Below, in pieces: positions 4,026-61,708 of a stretch of DNA of 64,000 nt. The translations under genes and the position numbers were made by a program. The notes under the pieces are model-generated. The model was not told the DNA's origin. It was given only the letters and a program-made list of their open reading frames with translations, and searched no databases. Position 1 is the stretch's first letter. Each line of letters starts with the position of its first letter. Where the stretch lies: positions 268,271-332,270 of the IMG/VR virus record IMGVR_UViG_3300009703_004110, one strand, 5' to 3'.

Positions 4026-4207
4026 TGGTAGGGGTTAGAAGACTCGAACTTCTTTGCGCCATAATAGTCCAACTCCAACTTCATGTTGCATATCGATCGC
4101 TTTGCAACTTCCATTCTTGCTGAAAACGAGCCGCCACATCACCCGTTCCTAGGTTGGGTATTGCGCACACTCTTATGGTTCGTTTTACACATATAAACTA
4201 AACCCCT
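4026..4207 (-). ncRNA. tRNA-like RNA with an insert of about 110 nt replacing the anticodon loop
   Basis: acceptor AGGGGTT/AACCCCT+ACCA, D arm GTTT/AAAC, T arm AGAAG-TTCGAGT-CTTCT, CCATAA/TTATGG closing the insert. Confidence 0.7.
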
Positions 4208-4210
4208 CAA

Positions 4211-4285
4211 TGGAGCGGATAACTGGATTCGAACCAGCGACATTTACGTTGGCAACGTAATGCTCTACCACTGAGCTATATCCGC
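4211..4285 (-). tRNA. tRNA-Gly(GCC)
   Basis: cloverleaf, TTACG-TTGCCAA-CGTAA, CCA end. Confidence 0.95.
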
Positions 4286-4571: not shown

Positions 4572-5750
4572 TTACTCTACAATACTGGTAACGTAACCGG
4601 CGCCGACAGTCTTGCCTCCCTCACGAATGGCAAAACGCATCTGCTCTTCCATACCAACAGGCTTCTGTAGACGGAAAGTAATATCCGCACGATCACCTGG
4701 GTTTACGATACCCACCTCTCCTACATCAATAGTACCAGTTACATCAGTAGTTCCGAAGAAAAACTGAGGACTGTAACCAGTTCCGAATGGACGGTGACGG
4801 CCGCCCTCGTCCTTAGTAAGAACAAGAACGTGAGCAGTTGCCTCAATGTGAGGAACAATAGCACCAGGAGCAGTAATTACCTGACCTCTCTGGACGCCAT
4901 CACGCTTCACACCACGAAGTAATAGACCAACGTTCATACCAGCTACTGCTGCATCAACATCCTTGTGGAAAGCCTGAGTACCAGTTACCACAGTGTCTTC
5001 GCCTTCGCTGTCAAGACCAACGATCTCAACCTTATCACCAACCCGTAGGGTTCCTCTTTCTACCTTGCCAGTAACTACGGTTCCACGACCCTTGATGTTA
5101 AATACATCTTCAATAGGCATCATGAAAGGAGAGTCATAGTCACGAGTAGGCTCAGGAATAGCATCCAAAGCTGTTACCAACTCTGTAATACAATTCAAAG
5201 CCTCGGCCTCGGCGTCTCCGGCGAGTGCGGCATTAAGAGCTTGTAGAGCGCTACCAAAGATAAAGGCCACATTGGTGTAACCATTGGACTCCAGTTGCTC
5301 TTCCACTTCCATCTCAACTAACTCAAGTAACTCAGGATCAGCTACGTCACACTTGTTAACGAAAACAACCATGTGCTCAACGCCGACCTGACGAGCCAAT
5401 AGAATGTGCTCAACGGTCTGCTTCTGTGGTCCTTGAGAACCATCGACAAGCAAGATTGCTCCATCCATCTGAGACGCGCCAGTAATCATGTTCTTGATAT
5501 AGTCAGCGTGACCCGGACAGTCAATGTGTGCATAGTGACGAGTGTCACTCTCGTATTCTACGTGAGAGGTATTAATGGTAATACCACGCTCCCTCTCTTC
5601 TTTGGCATTGTCAATCTCATCAAAAGACTTAGCCTTGCTTCCCTGCAATACTGCCTGTACCTGAGTAATAGCAGCAGTTAGAGTAGTCTTACCATGATCA
5701 ACGTGGCCGATGGTTCCTACATTTATATGGCACTTAGATTCTGTACTCAT
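4572..5750 (-). CDS. tuf: elongation factor Tu
   Basis: [25 protein letters not shown]; start reassigned to ATG 5750 (RBS, ATGA overlap with upstream HNH). Confidence 0.97.
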
Positions 5751-6316
5751 TTTATTTTCCCTCTTTCTATTGTTGTATATGAAATAATTTTTTTCATATG
5801 TTGAATCCACTCATCAAATGAATGAGAGCGCTTCATATAGTTGCAAGTTTTGCAACATATTTTAATATTGCTTAATACATACCCAACATCATTATTGGGT
5901 CTGTCAAGCCCTATTGTATCTATTTTTGAACCACAATATTCGCATGGTTTTTGCCACAAAGATTTAAACTCAATAAAAGATATACCAAATTTATATCCAC
6001 GTCTTTCAGCTTCGTTTTTATAAATAGTGTATTTACTGACCGGCGAATATCTGTGCCTATCTTTGCACGGTTTACAGTTGGGGTGATACCCATCCTTTCT
6101 GCTTGCTAATTTGTGATATTCAGCAATCGGTTTTTTAACATTACAATGCCCACAAACTTTTTCTGTTATAGCGGGCTTTGCCTTTGTTTTCATTTCTGAT
6201 TGAATTTTCTTTACGCAGTCCTTACATCTGGCCATCACACCCAATCGGCAAGTCTTGTTTTTATAAAACTCTGAAAGCTCTTTCACCTTACTACACTTAG
6301 TACATGTTTTCGTCAT
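5747..6316 (-). CDS. HNH-type homing endonuclease
   Basis: repeated CxxC..K...EFY modules, CEYCG..GLDRPNN..GY..SN...CCKTCN; AT-rich. Confidence 0.85.
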
Positions 6317-6628: not shown

Positions 6629-6872
6629 GTCAGAATATATTAGATATAGAATTGTTAGTGACGACTATTCGTGCAGGCATATCATTGACCTGCCCTTCCC
6701 AGATAACTTTCGGATATTCGCTCATTATCTCTCCATATAAATAATCCTAACATAGCTTTTTAAGACTACATCAGGACATTGAATCAAGACCTCTCCATTA
6801 CTAGATAGACAACGCTAACCAACTCAGCGCAAAAGAGTGTAAGTCTATAGTGGGTATTTCTACCGTCTTGAA

Positions 6873-6984
6873 TGAAGTCACCAAAGGGACTCGAACCCTC
6901 GATCTCAAACGGGGGAGGTCCACCCATCGATCGCGCCCAACCAATAGCCCCTTCCTCTCAGGACTAAAGACACCTGCTGATGAC
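6873..6984 (-). ncRNA. tRNA-like RNA with a non-canonical expanded core
   Basis: acceptor GTCATCA/TGGTGAC, T arm GAGGG-TTCGAGT-CCCTT, 3' TTCA; no canonical anticodon arm. Confidence 0.55.
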
Positions 6985-6992
6985 ATAAAAAT

Positions 6993-7119
6993 AGGGTGCG
7001 TTTTGTTGTAACGGTGTCCTACCATTAGACGATCACCCCATAAGATGGTGGGGCGAGTGGGATTCGAACCACACATTACCGGCTTTTCATGCTTAACTTT
7101 GGATTGCTGTTTACACCCT
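6993..7119 (-). ncRNA. circularly permuted tRNA-like RNA (YrlA/Y RNA-like architecture)
   Basis: order is T arm, 3' acceptor strand+ACCA, TCTTA loop, 5' acceptor strand, D arm; ends paired AGGGTGT/GCACCCT. Confidence 0.75.
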
Positions 7120-7121
7120 TA

Positions 7122-7197
7122 TGGCGGACTGTGGGGGTTACGATCCCCGTACTTCAGCGTGACAGGCCGATGTGTTACCAATTACACCACACAGTCC
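7122..7197 (-). tRNA. tRNA-Asp(GTC)
   Basis: TCGGC-CTGTCAC-GCTGA, GCCA end; variant T loop ATCGTAA. Confidence 0.9.
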
Positions 7198-7414
7198 ATA
7201 TTATCTTGCGCCTATTAATTTTTCAATACAGGCTTCTAACTCTTCTTCTTTCATCTTTTTAATGCCATGTTGTGTTCCTTGGGAGTATCTCCCAAGCGAC
7301 GATCCCATTTGCAATGAGCCATATCACAACCATGATAACAAAAGCTATCAGAGCATGGTCCCATCCACTTATCTCGTTCTTCTGAGACTATCTTATATTG
7401 TTCAGATGGGAACT

Positions 7415-35305: not shown

Positions 35306-35381
35306 TGGCACGCTGTAAGGGATTCGAACCCTTGACGCGGAGGTCTAGAATCTCCCGCTCTGACCGCTGAGCTAACAGCGC
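35306..35381 (-). tRNA. amber suppressor tRNA (anticodon CTA)
   Basis: canonical 76-nt numbering gives GGAGA-TTCTAGA-CCTCC; A31-C39 mismatch, G73, CCA end. Confidence 0.85.
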
Positions 35382-48943: not shown

Positions 48944-49389
48944 GCCGTTACCTGCAAGATATCAAGATAGAACAAAATACTTTCCTTGTCTTTATTACCA
49001 AAAGCGATATCAATCACATGGTATCGGTCTGTCAGTCGAATGGAGTATTGATCGCCCTTTAGAAATAACATTAGAGTTGCCAAATATTACTCGGCTGCCG
49101 TCTCTACTCGGTCTTAATATAACATTAGAAGTTCCAACCCAAAAATCAAGGGACTTTTGCAAATGATTGTCAAAGAGTCAATCTCTACAAGCCTCTCCGC
49201 AAATCTGATATAATCACCCGGGCTATAGCTATTTACTGAACCACTAATCACTTCGGCATGTGTTCCACCAATCTGTGGGTGAATCTTACACTTACCTCTA
49301 CTGCACGGGTTCTTTGGCTTGCTATAGAAAAACTTTCGTAATATACTTCCTATAAGATCCATCGACCTTCCGTGCGGCTATATGTTAAA

Positions 49390-49466
49390 TGGCTGGGGTA
49401 GTAGGGTTCGAACCTACAAACCTTCCGGTTCAAAGCCGGATGCTCCACCAGTTGAGCTATACCCCA
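49390..49466 (-). tRNA. tRNA-Gln(TTG)
   Basis: T1-A72, TCCGG-CTTTGAA-CCGGA, GCCA end. Confidence 0.93.
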
Positions 49467-51432: not shown

Positions 51433-53501
51433 CAGCCTCTCCTGTTTGCTATAATATCTTCTGCAACGCTACGCGGAACCTCTGCGTAATGAGATAGCTC
51501 CATAGTATGAGTACCACGGCCGCTAGTCTTAGAACGAAGCTCTGTGGTGTAACTAAAGGTTTCTGCTAGCGGGACCATAGCTGTAATGATTGATGTTCCA
51601 CCCTTATCCTCCATGCCCTGGATTTCTCCACGACGAGCATTAAGGGTTCCAATTACTGTACCAAGATAATCCTTTGGAACAATAACTTCAATCGCCATAA
51701 TCGGCTCAAGAAGAACAGGCTTGGCGTTTCGCATGGCCTCCTTAAAAGCCATAGCTCCGGCTTGAGAATACGTTCGCTCATTAGCATCAACACTATGAGT
51801 TGAGCCATCAATTAGCCTGACCAAAACATCAACTACTGGATAATCAGCAAGGACTCCAGAAGTAAATGCCTCTTCGATTCCCCTAAAGACTGGCTGGATA
51901 TATTCCTTGGGAATGGCACCACCAACAACTTTATTAATAAGCTCATGACCGCTACCTGCTTCACGAGGTTCAATCTCGATCACAGCATGACCATAAGAGC
52001 CCTTTCCACCGGTATGCCTCCAGAGCTTCTTATCAGCACTAGCAGCCGCACGAATAGTCTCTCGATAAGAAACCTGTGGGCGTCCAACACTAATCCCGAC
52101 ACCAAAATCGTCACGAAGTCGGGTAGTTAAAACTTCAAGGTGAAGCTCTCCCATGCCAGCCATAATAGTCTGTCCGGTCTCTCGATCAGTCCAAACTTTA
52201 AATGTTGGATCTTCATTGGTAAGCTTGGACAAAGCAAGTCCGAGCTTATCTTGATCAGAGTTCTTATTTGGTTCAACAGAAACTTGAATCACTGGCTCAG
52301 GAAAAGACATAGACTCAAGTAGAATTGGATTACCACGAAGAGATAAGGTGTCTCCTGTAGTAGCGTCCTTAAGACCTACAAGAGCGACAATATCTCCAGA
52401 ACGCATTTCAGTTCTATCTGCTCGTTCCTTTGCGTGCATTTCAAGAATACGAGAGATTCGCACCTTGCGACCCTTGGTGGCATTATAAGCATTACTGCCG
52501 GATGCCATAACTCCAGAGTAAACTCTCGCATAAGCAAGGGAACCAAAGAACTTATCCGTTACAATCTTAAAGACAAGTGCACTAAATGCCTCATCATCAT
52601 TCAGCTGCAAAACGATCTCTTCTTCTGAATCATCAATAGCTTTAATTTCGCCAATATCAGCAGGAGAAGGAAGGTATCGTACAATTGCATCAAGCAAAGG
52701 CTGAACGCCCTTATTCTTATATGCAGAGCCACATAGTACAAGTGTCGCTTCATTACTCAGAGTAATTTCACGAAGTCCTGCAACAAGATTCTCAACTGAA
52801 ATACTATCTGTTTCTGACCACTCCTTAAAGTAATCATCATTAAGCATAGCAACCGCTTCAAGAATCTCACAGTGCATATCATATGCGTCATCGTACATAT
52901 CAGAAGGAATATCCGAGTCGACCATTTCTAGCCCCATCTTGTCCTTCCAAGTAATTGCCTTCATTTCCACTAGATCAATTACTCCCTTGAAATCAGGGCC
53001 AGAACTAATCGGTAACTGTAGCGGTAAGACTGTAGCTCCAAGGCGTTCAATCATTGAGTCTACTGCACTTTGGAAGTCTGCACCAATCGCGTCCATCTTG
53101 TTGATGAAAGCAATTCGTGGAACGCCATAACGCTCTGCCTGACGCCATACGGTCTCTGACTGAGACTCGACACCACCCTTCGCACAAAAGACTGCCACAG
53201 AGCCATCTAGGACCCTTAGGGAGCGTTCTACTTCCACAGAGAAGTCAATGTGTCCCGGAGTATCAATGATGTTGATAGTGTGACTATCCCATTCGACAGT
53301 TGTAGCGGCAGAACTAATGGTAATGCCACGAGCCTGTTCCTGCTTTCCATCATCCATTGTAGTGTTACCATCATGGACCTCACCCATCATATGGTTCTTC
53401 CCGGTATAGAAAAGAATCCTTTCTGTGGTTGTAGTCTTGCCCGCATCAATGTGGGCCATGATCCCAATATTACGGGTGTGACTAATTCGTTCGGTACTCA
53501 T
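51432..53501 (-). CDS. fusA: elongation factor G
   Basis: [37 protein letters not shown]; 689 aa. Confidence 0.97.
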
Positions 53502-53903: not shown

Positions 53904-55085
53904 CTACTTATACGTCAGAGCATAAATGCTCTTTACAACTTCTTCAATCTTATCCATATCAGGTTCCTTTGGAACTACTGATTTTCCACTTCTCTCAATC
54001 TCATGAAGTTCATTCTTCTCGCGCTCGGCCCATTCAATTAACTTAGAATAAGACCAGTCGCCATTCCGAATTTCCTTCAACTCTTCTCTATCAGGTCTAT
54101 AAACCTGAACCACGCCTTGGGTCAGAACCTCTTTCCCCATACGGAGCAATCGAACCAAGTGCATGGCATGTTTGCAATCATAACCATACCTTGCTTCAAG
54201 TTCTGCCCGAGCAGGGTTTCGATTCTTCTTCCAGGACTGAAACGACTTCCATCGCTTCTTAGCAGCATCATACTGCTTTTCCTTTCTAAGTTCTGTCATG
54301 AAGTCATCACTAAAACCTAACCTAGAACCCATTGTATAGATTGCGGTGTCTCTAACTTCTATCCACTCGTCGGCGTCGATATCGTAGATGATACTAGCAT
54401 CTTCTGCTAGAAGCAAAAGCATGTTCGCTACGCCTTCCCAAAATGCCTCTTGATATTGATTGTCCGCATCTAATAGCCAGGGCGCAAGCTCCTGAATGTT
54501 TAGCTCAGCATAACGTAAAGCTGCGCCCATCTGATCGTGATGAATTCTCTTTGCAGGTGGCAGCCCAAAGTCTGCTCTGTCTGGTGGCGCTACCGGAGGG
54601 TTATCTAACCATCCCTTATGGGTTCGAATTCTTTTCAACTGAGACATGGCATAGCCACCGAACTTATATGCTGCACGACCAGATAGAAACAAGTCACGAC
54701 TATCTCGCAATAGTCCGCCAGCTTCTGTCATGTGGACGATGTGACGCTCATCAACATACAGTCCTTCAATGATATTAGGGTTGCAAGACGATGCCAGATT
54801 TACAAACTTATTAAAGCCGTAGATAACGCCCTCTTCATCTGCCTCTGGTAGTCCTGCTACCTCACTAACTCTTCCGCTCTTCTCTTCGCTCTTCCACATT
54901 ACTTGTTCGAATTTACGAAATGGAGATAGAATCTCAATCATAGGTGTAACTAAAACACCTTTAAAATCGGTATCAGAAGTAGGAGTATCAGTACCGTAAG
55001 ACTTAGAACCAGCTAATGTCAACAAGATAGTTGCATCTCTGATATCAAATCTTTGATTCTGAAATTCTGGCCAATTAAAATCCAT
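53904..55085 (-). CDS. Pol-beta-superfamily nucleotidyltransferase (RlaP/YcgL-like)
   Basis: GSKSYGT..SDTDFKG, NPN..E, GYD.KHAMHLVRLL, L..IR.G. Confidence 0.85.
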   Translation of the reverse strand: MDFNWPEFQNQRFDIRDATILLTLAGSKSYGTDTPTSDTDFKGVLVTPMIEILSPFRKFEQVMWKSEEKSGRVSEVAGLPEADEEGVIYGFNKFVNLASSCNPNIIEGLYVDERHIVHMTEAGGLLRDSRDLFLSGRAAYKFGGYAMSQLKRIRTHKGWLDNPPVAPPDRADFGLPPAKRIHHDQMGAALRYAELNIQELAPWLLDADNQYQEAFWEGVANMLLLLAEDASIIYDIDADEWIEVRDTAIYTMGSRLGFSDDFMTELRKEKQYDAAKKRWKSFQSWKKNRNPARAELEARYGYDCKHAMHLVRLLRMGKEVLTQGVVQVYRPDREELKEIRNGDWSYSKLIEWAEREKNELHEIERSGKSVVPKEPDMDKIEEVVKSIYALTYK

Positions 55086-55401: not shown

Positions 55402-56087
55402 TTCTTGTTAGGCCAACACTCAACACAGTGGCCGCCAAGATAAGTTATGGGCCACTTACTGCGATCCATTCCATCATTATGCATAGCACGCTCACCATAT
55501 AGCCGATTACATTCGGCGCATACACCATGAGTACGCAATTTGATCTTTAGGCCGTCATCTTGAACATAGAATAGTTCATCACCAGAGATAGAACATACCT
55601 GGATTTCACCATCAGTGTCTCGTCGAGCATCCTTTAGCCCTTCGATATTCCATTCCTTAGATCCATGAAGCATGTGACGAATCTTTGCACGAGGCTCAGT
55701 AGATACAGTTTTGGTTGCAATCACTTCAGGCTCCACGGCTGTAATTTCTTCTGCTTCTTCATGCTTATTTTCAATTTCAGAACGAGCATCATCTAACTCG
55801 GTCCATTCGCCACTTGGCGTTCCCTTAATACCAATGAGATCATGCACCCACAGTTGGTCTGCATACTCTACCACATGATGCTCAGGAAGACTCGGCTCCA
55901 ATGCTAAGATTTTAATCTTACCATTATCAAACCTAGTCATTACTTCATCATGCGGAAGAGTCCCCTTGTAAACAGCCTCAACAATAAGACGTTCCTTATT
56001 GTGAAGCTCTTGTAGCGGAGGAGTTAGGAAGAGAGTCATTAAAAACTCTTGACCAATATCATAATCAACCGTGGGCACACTACTCAT
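55398..56087 (-). CDS. hypothetical protein with C-terminal Cys motifs
   Basis: start trimmed to MSSVP; CxxC pairs. Confidence 0.6.
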   Translation of the reverse strand: MSSVPTVDYDIGQEFLMTLFLTPPLQELHNKERLIVEAVYKGTLPHDEVMTRFDNGKIKILALEPSLPEHHVVEYADQLWVHDLIGIKGTPSGEWTELDDARSEIENKHEEAEEITAVEPEVIATKTVSTEPRAKIRHMLHGSKEWNIEGLKDARRDTDGEIQVCSISGDELFYVQDDGLKIKLRTHGVCAECNRLYGERAMHNDGMDRSKWPITYLGGHCVECWPNKK

Positions 56088-57270
56088 TGGGAACTCCCTT
56101 GTCATCACCGTCAATATAATCAAAGGACTGAAGCCTTGCAGCCTCAATACCATTCACAGGAATCTTCAGCACTCGGGCTGCAATAAGATCCTTAATAGAA
56201 TCTAAGCCACCATCGAGATACTTAAAGCCAACAGACATGAGCTTCCTGTTAGAGCCGGATAGCTCCTTCAACACACGAGCCTGACCCTTACGAGTCGGTA
56301 GCTCAGCGACCTGACGCTCTTCCATCTCTTCAAGAAACTTAGTTACTTCGCTAACTACATCCTGCTTATCTTCCAAGAACTGTGTCATGAAAGGTTCGGC
56401 AAAGCTTGCAGACTCCCAATCCAAACCTCTTGCAAAGAAGAAGTCTCGCAACTCTCCGACTGAATTCAAGTCAGCAAACCATGCGATCTTACGAACGCGG
56501 TCTTCCGATAGATGAAACTTTAGTCGATGAATACGCAGGTATTCGTCTGCCTTGATCTTAATTAGCATAGCACCGTTACCACACCATGCTACAATACCTT
56601 CACTACCAATCCACGGAGCAATCTCGGCACGAAGCGCATTGATATCCATAGGTAGATCGTGGAATTGAACAGGGCGAGTCCCCGTAGTTTCTGCGACCTT
56701 TTCAATCAGGTGAGCAAAGCCAAAGAACTTCGGCAAAGTCTCATCATGATAAAGGTTCATATAACCAAGGAAAGTTAGCGCAGGTTCCCTGTACTCAAGG
56801 ACGATACGGTTGTTCGGAGAAGTATACTCAAAGAGCAGAGACTTGTCTCGGAACAAAGAAGCGTCTAGCAATGCCGGATACTTTTCGCGTACCAATTCCA
56901 TGACCGGGAAGCCAAAGCCATCAGCCAAAACATGCGAACCACGGGTACGAAAGTTAACGTGACCATCAATAACAGAACGAATGATCAGAGAGCCGTCCAT
57001 CTTTTCGGCAAAGCGTACTTCACCATTGTCAAGATAACCTTCAAACATCTTATCATGCTCTGGATTCTCGAAGAGATTGAAGAATTTTGGTAAAGATGCG
57101 CTTACGATATTTCCATTGGTATCAAGAAGTAAACTTCTTAAGTGTAACTCATCTAACGCCCACTTATGTTTAGATTTCTTCGGTACAATAAGAAAATAAA
57201 CTTTTCCATTCCAACTTCTCTCTGAAATCTTAAAGTCTTTTCTATTAATTTCTTCAATATTAATGTGCAT
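56080..57270 (-). CDS. T4 Rnl1-like RNA ligase
   Basis: R.L, KFFN, EKMDGSL, FEY.SP.N.IV..Y, EGIV, KIK..Y. Confidence 0.88.
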   Translation of the reverse strand: MHINIEEINRKDFKISERSWNGKVYFLIVPKKSKHKWALDELHLRSLLLDTNGNIVSASLPKFFNLFENPEHDKMFEGYLDNGEVRFAEKMDGSLIIRSVIDGHVNFRTRGSHVLADGFGFPVMELVREKYPALLDASLFRDKSLLFEYTSPNNRIVLEYREPALTFLGYMNLYHDETLPKFFGFAHLIEKVAETTGTRPVQFHDLPMDINALRAEIAPWIGSEGIVAWCGNGAMLIKIKADEYLRIHRLKFHLSEDRVRKIAWFADLNSVGELRDFFFARGLDWESASFAEPFMTQFLEDKQDVVSEVTKFLEEMEERQVAELPTRKGQARVLKELSGSNRKLMSVGFKYLDGGLDSIKDLIAARVLKIPVNGIEAARLQSFDYIDGDDKGVPNE

Positions 57271-60436: not shown

Positions 60437-61099
60437 TTATCCAATTGTGATCACCGCCGGGTTGACCGTGCCAGTCTCACTTTCAACTCCATACTTTTTG
60501 TTATGCCATTGACGCAAAGTATCGCCATGCTCCCAAACCTGAGATAGAGTGTGAACAGCCGCACCATACATGAAGCCGGTAATTCCCTCATTATCTGCCA
60601 AGCTAGAGGTCCTCTTTGCAGAACTTTCAATTGACTCTCCACGACTCAACGCTGATTCCATTAGTCTTGCCCAACGCTCTGCATATGTAACTACCGCTCC
60701 ACCATAGGGATCGGTATTCTTATTCTTAAAGTCATCCCATGCATCAGAATCTTTTAGAGTCATATTGTCAGGAGCGGTAGCTAGAAGATCCTCAAGAGCG
60801 TTCTTTCGCTCGCTCTCCTTTCTTTCCGCTTCTTTCATCCTCTCTCGATATTCATCAGAAGCAAGATACTCTTCTCGACGTCTATCACTTTCTTCCCAAT
60901 AAACCTTAGCCAACTCAGGTCCCGCCTTAGAACCGTCCGCAATCAGCTCAATACCATTAAAGGAAAGAGCCTGGGTCTCGCCTGTTTCTTTAGCATAAGC
61001 AACCAAGTCATCGGCCGCGCCAGAGATGGTCGAACCGGGAGTCGCCTCTAGCTCTCCATCATAAATCCAAAGATTATCTGAAATATTTTCGTAACTCAT
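60437..61099 (-). CDS. hypothetical protein
   Basis: 220 aa; DPYG, AERWA.LME, GITGFM, W.HG motifs; RBS GAGGTG. Confidence 0.7.
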   Translation of the reverse strand: MSYENISDNLWIYDGELEATPGSTISGAADDLVAYAKETGETQALSFNGIELIADGSKAGPELAKVYWEESDRRREEYLASDEYRERMKEAERKESERKNALEDLLATAPDNMTLKDSDAWDDFKNKNTDPYGGAVVTYAERWARLMESALSRGESIESSAKRTSSLADNEGITGFMYGAAVHTLSQVWEHGDTLRQWHNKKYGVESETGTVNPAVITIG

Positions 61100-61264: not shown

Positions 61265-61708
61265 TCATATGTCCGCTCCGTTGTTAATTAGCACTACCTT
61301 GAGTGCTTTGTTATAATCTTTGTAAGTTGAAGTGTCTGCACAGATTGAGTCGTAGTCAACCCATCTAACATATCCTTCGCCTTCTTTCTTTCCTTCCTTA
61401 ACCCAATCGGCATTAATATTACCGTAGTAAAGATAGGTAGAACAGAGGTTGCCATCACAATCTCGCATCCTAAAGATTTCTTCAATAGGTCTTTTGCCTA
61501 AACGAAAGCCGGTCTCTTCAAAAGTTTCCCGAGTAATTGCCTCACGCGGAGTTTCACCAGGATCAATCTTGCCACCAGGAAGGTTTATATCATTGTCATC
61601 ATGCTTACGAGCTACTGACAGGATCCTTCCGTCTTCTGAAAAGATTACGATTGTTACAGCAAAAAGATCATCTTCCATTTCAAGTCCCATGTTCTTCACA
61701 AAAATCAT
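61265..61708 (-). CDS. NUDIX hydrolase
   Basis: PGGKIDPGETPREAITRETFEETG. Confidence 0.9.
   Translation of the reverse strand: MIFVKNMGLEMEDDLFAVTIVIFSEDGRILSVARKHDDNDINLPGGKIDPGETPREAITRETFEETGFRLGKRPIEEIFRMRDCDGNLCSTYLYYGNINADWVKEGKKEGEGYVRWVDYDSICADTSTYKDYNKALKVVLINNGADI

What the first reader, a model, noticed from the sequence alone, without database searches (positions are those of the whole stretch)
6993..7119. Circularly permuted tRNA (YrlA/Y RNA-like) that retains an internal ACCA
Seen on the minus strand: AGGGTGT-AAACAGCAA..., CCGGT, T arm, TCGCCCC-ACCA, TCTTA, TGGGGTGA, D arm, ACCG, ...GCACCCT. The 3' half precedes the 5' half and the RNA ends replace the anticodon loop. Established: bacterial YrlA RNAs have this permuted tRNA mimicry and bind Ro60/Rsr. 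No Ro60/TROVE gene is in this window. Inference: a phage Y RNA, or an anticodon-less tRNA whose loop could be cut to expose CCA.
Basis: partly seen in the sequence, partly recalled or inferred. Interest (0 to 1): 0.75.

Follow-up and report, generated by a model that had tools for sequence, protein, structure and literature searches.

The report
Phage Y RNA with permuted tRNA core
This 127-base stretch is very probably a small non-coding RNA of a giant phage: a Y RNA, built as a tRNA turned inside out and still carrying a CCA, whose likely partner is a divergent Ro60-like protein encoded 80 kb away, in what looks like an undescribed Y RNA/Ro60 subclass.

Summary
On the minus strand, window 6993-7119 reads: 7-bp closing stem, ACAGCAA, T arm, 7-bp acceptor hairpin with loop ACCAUCUUAU, D arm, 3-4 bp anticodon-type stem, closing stem.

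Nineteen related phage elements share this permuted cloverleaf, with compensatory changes in 16 of 19 pairs and a covarying 15:48 tertiary pair. It is therefore one folded RNA, not two decayed tRNAs.

A model built only from cores beside Ro60-type genes in other phages, without this element, scores it at 56 bits. Rfam's YrlA model misses it, and the canonical GNCGAA Ro-binding motif is absent.

The window and the trimmed 332-kb record have no TROVE gene. The full contig (391-420 kb) encodes a DUF2828/DUF7788 protein that is a full-length Ro60 homologue by profile and fold.

Around such genes in 7 of 8 phage loci, RNA units with a 5'-AG...CU-3' closing stem followed by ACAGCAA cluster on the gene's strand (23 seen, 3.6 expected). 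Two to three such units flank this phage's own gene.

The element is best read as the tRNA-like Y RNA of that subclass. RNase P cleavage exposing ACCA is plausible by precedent but untested. No RNA data exist.

The parts
6993..7119 (-). Whole element: 127-nt Y-RNA-like RNA with a permuted tRNA-like core
   Evidence: Sequence. CM R1 71.9 bits, the only copy in the 332-kb record. Leave-one-out CM R2 56.3 bits.
7113..7119 (-). 5' strand of the closing stem, AGGGUGU; pairs with 6993-6999
   Evidence: In the MFE and centroid folds. Every relative has a 5-10 bp closing stem of a different sequence, nearly always 5'-AG...CU-3'.
7104..7110 (-). ACAGCAA motif, 2 nt after the closing stem; proposed binding determinant for the Ro60-like protein
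   Evidence: Same motif at the same place in L041, L043 (UCAGCAA), L062 units 1-4, L067, L060:636-684, L060:4391-4535, and the L194, L197 and L198 arrays. Its role in binding is inferred.
7078..7081 (-). 3' strand of the anticodon-type stem, CGGU; pairs with 7012-7015 (ACCG). No anticodon loop exists.
   Evidence: Helix 1 (3 modelled pairs, all with changes on both sides; 84.6% paired). Big4 has AGGU/ACCU.
7057..7074 (-). T arm: GUG(U)GG UUCGAAU CCCAC, with one bulged U in the 5' strand
   Evidence: the CM places the U as an insertion. A base is bulged at the same place in G001 (A) and in Zooman and Big4 (C).
7050..7056 (-). Acceptor 3' strand, UCGCCCC (positions 66-72)
   Evidence: Acceptor helix 100% paired in 13 sequences; 6 of 7 pairs change on both sides.
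7040..7049 (-). Loop closing the acceptor stem, A73-C-C-A-UCUUA-U(-1); ACCA at 7046-7049. Predicted RNase P site between 7040 (U-1) and 7039 (G+1).
   Evidence: Sequence. NCCA also in G001, L056, L041, L043, Zooman A, Big4 A and L067; C74 in 19 of 19. Cleavage is inferred from M. smegmatis YrlA (PMC4201824).
7033..7039 (-). Acceptor 5' strand, GGGGUGA (positions 1-7)
7016..7030 (-). D arm: GUCU AAUGGUA GGAC (G18 G19 present; A15 pairs with U48)
   Evidence: Helix 4 (all 4 pairs change on both sides). 15:48 covariation.
6993..6999 (-). 3' strand of the closing stem, GCACCCU, followed by AUUUUUAU
   Evidence: U-rich tails also follow the closing stem in L043, G001 and L060:4391-4535.
7122..7197 (-). 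tRNA-Asp(GUC) with encoded CCA, 2 nt upstream of the element; probable co-transcript
   Evidence: ARAGORN and Rfam 48.6 bits. Co-transcription is inferred from the 2-nt spacing.
7198..7226 (-). Promoter-like site, TTGAAA-17-TAATAT, directly upstream of tRNA-Asp
   Evidence: The number of such sites does not exceed the shuffles, so only its position is suggestive.
6877..6983 (-). Second, anticodon-less tRNA-shaped element (acceptor GUCAUCA/UGGUGAC, T arm GAGGG UUCGAGU CCCUU, CAGCAG near the 5' end); possibly a second Y-like RNA of the same transcript
   Evidence: Rfam tRNA only 16.6 bits, with a 38-nt insert. Fold. ARAGORN finds nothing there, even with introns allowed, apart from a tRNA-Gly(ccc) call at about 6874-6949 (a different register) at the loosest threshold, -ps80. 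Unresolved.

Best explanation
The element is a phage Y RNA of the YrlA type.

Anatomy. Its two ends pair in a 7-bp closing stem (5'-AG...CU-3') beside an internal loop that begins with ACAGCAA. The rest folds as a tRNA without an anticodon loop, in permuted order: T arm, a 7-bp acceptor stem closed by the loop ACCAUCUUAU, then the D arm.

Proposed working:
- It is made from the tRNA-Asp transcript.
- The closing stem with ACAGCAA is bound by the phage's divergent Ro60-like ring protein (DUF2828/DUF7788, phrog_850). That protein is encoded about 80 kb away in the same tRNA and RNA-repair island.
- The tRNA-shaped module is offered to tRNA-recognising or RNA-decay enzymes, in the way Y RNAs tether Ro60 to PNPase.
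- Because the acceptor has 7 bp, U at -1 and A73-CCA, RNase P probably cuts 5' of G+1. Trimming would then leave a two-piece RNA with a free ACCA end, as found for M. smegmatis YrlA.

Shown here: the fold, the homology to cores beside Ro60-type genes, the Ro60 nature of the protein, and the clustering of AG-stem/ACAGCAA units at such genes.

Inferred: expression, protein binding, cleavage and function.
For: Fold:
- 92.3% of cells pair against 66.6% in shuffles; 16 of 19 pairs change on both sides; the acceptor helix is 100% paired.
- The 15:48 pair is A:U or G:C in 18 of 19 elements.
- Closing stems of unrelated sequence occur in every relative.

Homology to cores beside Ro60-type genes:
- 79% identity to an unannotated Zooman element about 3 kb upstream of its Ro-like gene.
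- The same kind of core lies upstream of BRock gp191, of the Big4 and A3Wally Ro-like genes, and next to Ro-like genes in G003 and G006.
- These relatives match Rfam YrlA weakly over the core, at 27-33 bits.
- CM R2, built from ten such cores without this element, scores it at 56.3 bits.

Ro60-like protein in this phage (P0002):
- phrog_850, E = 7e-139, the same family as Zooman Ro and the G001 TROVE protein.
- hhalign against a TROVE alignment: 97.6%, E = 3e-12 over 357 columns.
- The AF2 model's top 13 PDB matches are all Ro60; phage phiLo Ro60 gives E = 5e-10 and TM 0.62/0.64.

Shared RNA module:
- Units L060:636-684 and L060:4391-4535 flank P0002. The second reads ACAGCAGUCCAAUUUAAAUU against ACAGCAAUCCAAAGUUAAGC here. 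It is conserved in a related 403-kb phage.
- AG-stem/ACAGCA units lie within 2 kb, on the gene's strand, at 7 of 8 DUF2828-type loci: 23 seen against 3.6 expected, Poisson P about 6e-12, with 4 on the other strand.
- The motif class follows the protein class. ACAGCAA goes with DUF2828 in this phage, G002/G003 and G004. GNCGA goes with TROVE in the actinophages and G005.

Precedent:
- RNase P cleavage and CCA on M. smegmatis YrlA (PMC4201824).
- Phage Ro60 with Yrl RNAs and host PNPase (PMC12135203).
- TROVE with a tRNA-like partner in jumbo-phage RNA repair (PMC7824862).
- The window also holds genes for an Rnl1-type ligase and RlaP.
Against: - No transcript data. Only DNA runs of a subsurface metagenome hold the sequence.
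- The element is about 80 kb from the Ro60-like gene, whereas most described Y RNAs are adjacent to theirs.
- The GNCGAA/CGAA motif, which is needed for binding in canonical Ro60 systems, is absent. Rfam YrlA gives no match even at E <= 10.
- RNA binding by any DUF2828-type protein has not been shown.
- One of eight DUF2828 loci (L195) has no such unit.
- In G001 and G005 the tRNA-like element is also far from the TROVE gene (80-120 kb), so linkage is by genome, not by neighbourhood.
- NCCA is kept in only 8 of the 19 elements. Four of those eight were found with a pattern that required CCA.
- The Poisson background comes from this phage's genome only.
Confidence: 0.7

Rival explanations
1. 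A tRNA mimic that works without any Ro60-like protein. It would be released from the tRNA transcript by RNase P and act as a decoy, sponge or substrate for tRNA-directed enzymes, whether host nucleases or toxins, modification enzymes, the CCA-adding enzyme, or the phage's own EF-Tu.
For: It lies in a tRNA array 80 kb from the Ro-like gene and 1.2 kb from a phage EF-Tu gene. It has an intact 7-bp acceptor, A73-CCA, U at -1, and conserved T and D loops. Relatives in G001, L041, L043 and L056 also sit inside tRNA arrays.
Against: It does not explain the closing stem with ACAGCAA. That module is shared with non-tRNA-like units that cluster at Ro60-like genes, including the two to three beside this phage's own gene. 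Every sufficiently long contig with such an element encodes a Ro60-type protein.
Confidence: 0.17
2. A permuted tRNA gene in the manner of Cyanidioschyzon merolae. The ends of the transcript would be joined, for example by the phage's Rnl1-type ligase, and the acceptor loop opened to give a working tRNA.
For: The 3' half precedes the 5' half, and an encoded ACCA is followed by a 6-nt spacer. The phage encodes a T4 Rnl1-like ligase. On the re-permuted sequence ARAGORN calls tRNA-Phe(GAA) with a 46-nt 'intron', but only at a lowered threshold.
Against: - No anticodon loop or bulge-helix-bulge motif is present.
- The 'intron' is the conserved closing stem plus ACAGCAA module, which units without any tRNA part also carry.
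- The relatives share no anticodon-like loop.
- The phage already has tRNA-Phe(GAA).
- ARAGORN finds nothing at its default threshold.
Confidence: 0.04
3. A functionless remnant of two tandem tRNA genes: the 3' half of one and the 5' half of the next.
For: Tandem tRNA junctions can score up to about 47 bits with the core model (L194:2687-2760). Phage tRNA arrays do decay.
Against: - The upstream 3' acceptor strand is fully complementary to the downstream 5' strand in all 13 aligned sequences, and 6 of 7 pairs covary.
- The 15:48 pair covaries between the two 'halves'.
- The closing stems covary as whole helices.
- The element is conserved between phages of 40% G+C and high-G+C actinophages.
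Confidence: 0.03
4. The tRNA-like domain of a two-piece (permuted) tmRNA.
For: It has the same gene order as permuted ssrA: T arm, acceptor 3' strand with CCA, a short spacer, then the acceptor 5' strand. Relatives give weak hits to cyano_tmRNA and tmRNA_permuted, at about 15 bits.
Against: - There is no G3:U70; the pair is G3-C70.
- A full D stem and an anticodon-type stem are present.
- No tag reading frame or pseudoknots were identified.
- ARAGORN in tmRNA mode finds nothing in the 332-kb record.
Confidence: 0.01

Closest known systems
YrlA (Rfam RF02553), the bacterial and phage Y RNA with a tRNA-like domain; Chen et al. 2014, PMC4201824
   Same: The 5' and 3' ends pair in a stem. The permuted order is T arm, acceptor-like hairpin, D arm. 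The 15:48 pair covaries as A:U or G:C. It occurs in phages that encode a Ro60-type protein. Relatives of this element give sub-threshold RF02553 matches over model positions 23-87.
   Different: RF02553 does not detect this element at all. ACAGCAA replaces the GNCGAA(N0-1)G Ro-binding motif. The partner protein is of the DUF2828/DUF7788 type, not Pfam TROVE. The gene is 80 kb away rather than adjacent. A full NCCA sits in the acceptor loop.
Mycobacterium smegmatis YrlA
   Same: It has a 7-bp acceptor stem. It is cut by RNase P in the loop in vivo and in vitro, and the 5' piece ends in CCA.
   Different: In M. smegmatis only C is encoded and CA is added afterwards. Here the whole ACCA is encoded, followed by UCUUAU, so exonucleolytic trimming would suffice. 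Cleavage here is untested.
Yrl1 and Yrl2 with Ro60 of Thermus phage phiLo (PMC12135203; PDB 9kop, 9l5y)
   Same: A phage-encoded Ro60 ring protein with phage-encoded Y-like RNAs of stem, bulge and stem. The phiLo protein is the best structural match of this phage's P0002.
   Different: Yrl1 and Yrl2 carry the CGAA motif, lie directly upstream of the Ro60 gene, and are not described as tRNA-like. P0002 is only 17-18% identical to that protein.
Circularly permuted tRNA genes of Cyanidioschyzon merolae, and two-piece tmRNA genes (from my own knowledge)
   Same: In the gene, the 3' half with CCA precedes the 5' half, separated by a short spacer.
   Different: Those genes give a complete tRNA or tmRNA after processing. 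Here there is no anticodon loop, no BHB motif, no G3:U70 and no tag frame.

Membership tests
YrlA / bacterial Y RNA | tRNA-like domain in permuted order (T arm, acceptor-like hairpin, D arm), supported by covariation | tested here: met
   Leave-one-out CM 56.3 bits, full length.
YrlA / bacterial Y RNA | tRNA tertiary signature: the 15:48 Levitt pair covaries (G:C or A:U), with G18 G19 and the T loop UUCGAAU | tested here: met
   A15:U48 here; 18 of 19 elements are A:U or G:C.
YrlA / bacterial Y RNA | The 5' and 3' ends pair in a stem next to an internal loop (the Ro-binding module) | tested here: met
   AGGGUGU/GCACCCU in the MFE and centroid folds. All relatives have closing stems of different sequence.
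YrlA / bacterial Y RNA | Conserved GNCGAA(N0-1)G (CGAA) motif on the 5' strand | tested here: not met
   The sequence has ACAGCAAUCC at that place. The motif is present in the Zooman, Big4, A3Wally, BRock and L065 elements.
YrlA / bacterial Y RNA | Reaches the Rfam RF02553 gathering score (69 bits) | tested here: not met
   No match at E <= 10 over 6700-7400. Relatives beside Ro60-type genes reach only 27-33 bits.
YrlA / bacterial Y RNA | Encoded next to a Ro60 (TROVE) gene | tested here: not met
   No TROVE gene in the window or in the 332-kb record. A Ro60 homologue of the DUF2828 type lies about 80 kb away on the same contig and strand.
YrlA / bacterial Y RNA | Expressed as a stable RNA and bound by Ro60 | not testable with these tools
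   Only DNA runs hold the sequence.
Proposed subclass: AG-stem/ACAGCAA RNAs of DUF2828-type Ro60 homologues | 5'-AG...CU-3' closing stem of 7-10 bp, then 0-3 nt, then ACAGCA(A/U/G); A-rich 3' side of the loop | tested here: met
   AGGGUGU-AA-ACAGCAA ... CAACAAAAC-GCACCCU. It is the only such unit in the 332-kb record.
Proposed subclass: AG-stem/ACAGCAA RNAs of DUF2828-type Ro60 homologues | The genome encodes a DUF2828/DUF7788 protein with further units of the same kind beside it | tested here: met
   P0002 with units at L060:636-684 and L060:4391-4535. Enrichment at 7 of 8 loci.
Permuted tRNA gene (C. merolae type) | An anticodon loop restored by joining the ends; a BHB motif at the junction | tested here: not met
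   No anticodon loop. ARAGORN finds nothing on the re-permuted sequence at default settings. The junction is the conserved Y-type module.
Two-piece tmRNA | G3:U70 alanine identity, a tag reading frame, pseudoknots | tested here: not met
   G3-C70. ARAGORN in tmRNA mode is negative.

The most novel reading that the evidence does not exclude
The element is one member, the tRNA-like one, of an undescribed class of Y RNAs defined by a 5'-AG...CU-3' closing stem followed by ACAGCAA.

These RNAs would be the partners of the DUF2828/DUF7788 proteins. That family had more than 7,800 proteins at E <= 0.001 in the one search made, and its members are full-length Ro60 homologues that are not annotated as such.

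In this class the tRNA-like member keeps a complete, genome-encoded NCCA. RNase P cleavage would then yield a two-piece RNA with a tRNA-type 3' end, open to tRNA enzymes and perhaps to the phage's own EF-Tu.
Probability: 0.5. Interest if true: 0.8.

Novelty: new variant of a known kind. Interest (0 to 1): 0.62.

Why it matters
Y RNAs and Ro60 are known in bacteria and in some phages, but what the tRNA-like module does is still open.

First, this case links a very large and essentially unstudied protein family (DUF2828/DUF7788) to Ro60 and to a recognisable RNA partner with a new motif. Many further Ro60/Y RNA systems in phages could then be found from sequence alone.

Second, it gives a natural series of tRNA-like Y RNAs whose acceptor loops range from a tetraloop to a full encoded NCCA. 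That series makes the question of whether the mimic is opened by RNase P and given a tRNA 3' end directly testable.

Third, it places the system in a giant-phage island of tRNAs, EF-Tu, EF-G, an Rnl1-type ligase and RlaP. This fits a role in keeping or controlling the tRNA pool during infection.

Tried and rejected
- Rfam, at gathering threshold and at E <= 10: no YrlA match to the element.
- First viral pattern, which required the D-loop and anticodon-stem letters: 0 hits.
- Neighbour proteins (121 aa and 189 aa) in viral contigs: no relatives. The 251-aa neighbour against GenBank phages: none. The 121-aa neighbour against the protein collection: only homologues of about 54% identity on unrelated small contigs, so no orthologous locus of the element was found in related giant phages.
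- EF-Tu against phages: only bacterial-type matches of about 55% identity in contaminated records.
- Reads: both runs are DNA from the same subsurface study type, with no RNA and no variant of the element.
- Searching the 391-kb JGI contig directly was not possible. I walked along an ENA assembly of the same phage instead.
- Ten of the 19 metagenome pattern hits are an ordinary bacterial tRNA-Tyr followed by unrelated sequence. L051 and L054 stay ambiguous. L006 is a plain tandem tRNA pair.
- Second-best CM hits, at window 4177-4250 and L194:2687-2760, are tRNA junctions and not permuted elements. Core-model scores below about 50 bits are therefore not trustworthy.
- Pattern ACAGCANTCCAANNTNAA in viral contigs gave chance hits: 11 of 80 had a stem, against 14 of 80 controls.
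- Genome contigs: no NCCA-type element with this acceptor in any of 185,579 species genomes.
- phmmer of P0002 against PDB sequences gave nothing useful. Only the profile, PHROG and fold comparisons showed the Ro60 relationship.
- I did not use complex prediction, because it gives no verdict for protein with RNA.

Full report
**1. What is in the sequence**

Read on the minus strand, window 7119-6993 is as follows:
- AGGGUGU, then AA, then ACAGCAA, then UCCAAAGUUAAGCAUGAAAAGC
- CGGU, then AAU
- T arm: GUG(U)GG UUCGAAU CCCAC
- acceptor 3' strand: UCGCCCC
- loop: ACCAUCUUAU
- acceptor 5' strand: GGGGUGA, then UC
- D arm: GUCU AAUGGUA GGAC
- ACCG, then UUACAACAAAAC, then GCACCCU

With one U of the T stem bulged, the geometry is that of a standard tRNA: a 7-bp acceptor, a 5-bp T stem, U8, G18 G19, a 4-bp D stem, A73-CCA and U at -1. 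The differences are that the acceptor stem is closed by a 10-nt loop and that a 7-bp closing stem made by the two ends replaces the anticodon loop.

The element starts 2 nt after the encoded CCA of tRNA-Asp at 7122-7197. It is followed by AUUUUUAU and then by a second odd tRNA-shaped sequence at 6877-6983.

Alone, the fold is not statistically remarkable (z = -1.36). ARAGORN and Rfam do not call it, and the Rfam YrlA model is silent even at E <= 10.

**2. It is one conserved, structured RNA and not two tRNA fragments**

BLAST found an unannotated relative in Microbacterium phage Zooman, 79% identical over 81 nt. Further relatives came from Big4, A3Wally and Streptomyces phage BRock. Pattern scans added elements from viral and metagenomic contigs: G001, L056, L041, L043 and L061-L067.

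The comparative evidence:
- On a 13-sequence alignment fitted to a core model, 92.3% of cells pair. The figure is 66.6% for shuffled partners and about 45% for slid partners.
- 16 of 19 pairs show changes on both sides.
- The acceptor helix, which joins the 'upstream 3' half' to the 'downstream 5' half', is paired in every sequence, and 6 of its 7 pairs covary.
- The tertiary 15:48 pair is A:U in nine and G:C in nine of 19 elements. Chen et al. (PMC4201824) used the same signature to argue that YrlA RNAs fold like tRNA.
- Each relative has a closing stem of a different sequence.

This excludes the reading of two decayed tRNAs. The alignment was fitted to the model, which favours pairing somewhat. 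The slid controls and the by-eye parses do not depend on that fitting.

**3. It belongs with Y RNAs that lie beside Ro60-type genes**

- In Zooman, Big4 and A3Wally the cores lie in arrays of units 2-3 kb upstream of genes annotated as Ro-like RNA binding protein. Those units carry GAGCCGAAG...GGUUAUC motifs.
- In BRock two cores lie just upstream of gp191.
- These cores match Rfam YrlA over its tRNA-like part at 27-33 bits, below the 69-bit threshold.
- A model built from ten cores that sit beside Ro60-type genes, leaving out this element and G001, scores the window's element at 56.3 bits over its full length. It puts the bulged U in as an insertion. The next window hit, a tRNA junction, has 31.7 bits.
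- The 332-kb record holds a single copy.

**4. The 'missing' Ro60**

The window and the 332-kb IMG/VR record have no TROVE or RtcB gene.

That record is a trimmed version of a 391-kb JGI contig. An ENA assembly of the same phage has 420 kb. Walking past the window's end shows more tRNAs and phage-type genes.

About 80 kb from the element, on the same strand, lies a 478-aa DUF2828/DUF7788 protein, P0002 at L060:2067-3503. Three lines of evidence make it a full-length Ro60 homologue:
- It matches PHROG 850 ('RNA-binding protein') end to end at E = 7e-139. Zooman Ro and the G001 TROVE protein match the same family.
- Its family profile aligns to a TROVE profile at 97.6% probability, E = 3e-12, over 357 columns that span both the helical and the vWA parts.
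- Its AlphaFold model (pLDDT 81.5) has Ro60 structures as its 13 best PDB matches. Thermus phage phiLo Ro60 comes first, with E = 5e-10 and TM 0.62/0.64.
- A language-model search points the same way.

**5. A shared RNA module ties the element to that protein**

Two RNA units flank P0002 on its strand:
- L060:636-684 reads GGGUGCUA | ACAGCAACUU ... | UGGCACCC.
- L060:4391-4535 reads GGGAUACA | CUU | ACAGCAGUCCAAUUUAAAUU ... | UGUAUCCC and is followed by a U-rich tail.
- A weaker third candidate lies at L060:4722-4879 (AAUUAGA | GC | ACAGCAAUCA ... | UCUAGUU).

The window's element begins AGGGUGU | AA | ACAGCAAUCCAAAGUUAAGC. The downstream unit is conserved in a related 403-kb phage whose Ro-like protein is 61% identical.

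In G003, four tandem units of this kind directly follow a 573-aa Ro-like gene (hhalign 99.6% to the DUF2828 family). Two of the four have a permuted tRNA-like core.

Across eight DUF2828-type loci, 23 units lie within 2 kb on the gene's strand. Each has a stem of at least 7 bp followed within 0-3 nt by NCAGCA. The background density of this phage's own genome predicts 3.6, which gives a Poisson P of about 6e-12. Only 4 lie on the opposite strand. Seven of the eight loci have at least one unit.

Almost all closing stems start with AG and end with CU, as the window's does. It is the only unit of that form in the 332-kb record.

The motif class follows the protein class:

| RNA motif after the closing stem | Protein type | Where |
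|---|---|---|
| ACAGCAA | DUF2828 type | this phage, G002/G003, G004 |
| GNCGA | Pfam TROVE | actinophages, G005 |
| a hairpin-type variant | weakly scoring TROVE | G001, G006 |

**6. How it most likely works**

I read the element as the tRNA-like (YrlA-type) Y RNA of a Ro60 subclass.

- Shown: the fold, the homology, the Ro60 nature of P0002, and the clustering of the module at such genes.
- Inferred: that the closing stem with ACAGCAA is the protein's binding site; that the RNA is cut out of the tRNA-Asp transcript; that the tRNA-shaped module engages tRNA or RNA-decay enzymes.

A promoter-like site lies directly upstream of tRNA-Asp and a terminator-like site at 6777-6744. Neither count exceeds chance.

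For the ACCA there is a direct precedent. M. smegmatis YrlA has a 7-bp acceptor stem, is cleaved by RNase P in vivo and in vitro, and its 5' piece ends in CCA.

Here the RNase P determinants are all present: 7 + 5 stacked pairs, U at -1 and RCCA. The CCA is fully encoded, as in the phage's own tRNAs, so exonucleolytic trimming of UCUUAU would expose it.

Across the 19 elements:
- C74 is invariant.
- N73 is a purine in 17.
- A full NCCA is kept in eight. Four of those were found with a pattern that required it. Of the seven contigs found by the scan that did not require it (six distinct elements), two have it.

I put Y RNA status at about 0.7 and cleavage to a free CCA at about 0.4-0.5.

**7. 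Comparison with what is known, and novelty**

Phage Y RNAs and phage Ro60 have been described (PMC4201824; PMC12135203; PMC7824862), so the kind is known. What I could not find described is:
- the link between DUF2828/DUF7788 proteins and Y RNAs;
- the AG-stem/ACAGCAA module that replaces the CGAA motif;
- tRNA-like members with a complete encoded NCCA that lie in tRNA arrays far from the protein gene.

No such NCCA-type element with this acceptor occurs in 185,579 bacterial and archaeal species genomes. I therefore file it as a new variant of a known kind.

**8. Limits**

- There are no RNA data.
- About 32 kb of the contig was not read.
- The background for the enrichment test comes from one genome.
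- Orthologues of the element in close relatives of this phage were not found.
- The second tRNA-shaped sequence at 6877-6983 is unresolved.

Noticed in passing
window 6877-6983 (-): A second tRNA-shaped sequence lies right after the element. It has a 7-bp acceptor-type stem (GUCAUCA/UGGUGAC) and a good T arm (GAGGG UUCGAGU CCCUU), but no anticodon loop; about 47 nt stand where the anticodon arm and variable loop (normally about 22 nt) would be. CAGCAG lies near its 5' end. Rfam tRNA gives 16.6 bits. ARAGORN finds nothing except a tRNA-Gly(ccc) call at about 6874-6949 (a different register) at the loosest threshold, -ps80. It could be a second Y-like RNA of the same transcript, or a decayed tRNA.
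   Followed up: partly
window 4572-5810 (-); about 52199-53501 (-); 56080-57270 (-); 53904-55085 (-); 60437-61099 (-); 61265-61708 (-): The phage encodes its own EF-Tu, with all three domains and about 55% identity to bacterial EF-Tu. It also encodes an EF-G homologue, a T4 Rnl1-type RNA ligase, RlaP, Tad4 and a NUDIX protein, all inside the tRNA-rich region. Together these form a translation and RNA-repair island.
   Followed up: partly
window end (64000) and beyond; L059, L060: The IMG/VR 'provirus' boundary at the window's end looks like an artefact. The source contig (391 kb at JGI, 420 kb at ENA) continues with tRNAs (Arg x3, Glu, Lys, Leu) and phage-type genes. The phage is probably about 390-420 kb, and the trimmed record lacks the Ro60-like gene.
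   Followed up: partly
L060:1340-1972 and L193:4265-4882: A TilS-like PP-loop ATPase gene (PF01171) sits directly upstream of the Ro60-like gene, both in this phage and in a related 403-kb phage. L196 has one further upstream. The related phage also carries a class II aminoacyl-tRNA synthetase fragment and a tRNA_bind protein nearby.
   Followed up: no
window 35306-35381 (-): A tRNA with anticodon CUA, which ARAGORN labels 'Pyl', meaning an amber-suppressor-type tRNA. I did not examine whether the phage reads TAG as sense, and I claim no alternative code.
   Followed up: no
window 49373-49449 (+) against 49390-49466 (-): ARAGORN calls two tRNAs on opposite strands of the same DNA: Arg-UCG on plus and Gln-UUG on minus. 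Rfam supports the minus-strand one at 66.2 bits, so the plus-strand call is probably a mirror artefact.
   Followed up: no
L004:4802-4869 (Big4 gene 182) and L008:3495-3623 (A3Wally gene 192): Two GenBank annotations overlap Y-like RNAs and are probably wrong. One is a 'tRNA-Ser(cga)' in Big4 that lies on the permuted tRNA-like core B. The other is a 42-aa 'hypothetical protein' in A3Wally that lies on core A. None of the Y RNA arrays in Zooman, Big4, A3Wally or BRock is annotated.
   Followed up: partly
window 7071; L007, L001 and L004 equivalents: A single bulged base in the 5' strand of the T stem, between the second and third pair from the loop, is shared by this element (U), G001 (A) and Zooman and Big4 (C). 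Other family members lack it. It may be a protein contact or simply a mark of shared descent.
   Followed up: partly
L062:9029-9453; L041 and L067 elements: In several phages each ACAGCAA unit is followed, right after the closing stem, by GAUAAG or GAUA(A/G). This may be a processing or spacing signal between tandem units. The window's element has AUUUUUAU there instead.
   Followed up: no
L051:4803-4880 (-) and L054:1722-1813 (-): Two metagenomic hits have complementary acceptor strands around an NCCA loop, but their flanks are unclear. In L051 the downstream half looks like a class II tRNA-Leu. They may be tandem copies of one tRNA or further permuted elements.
   Followed up: no
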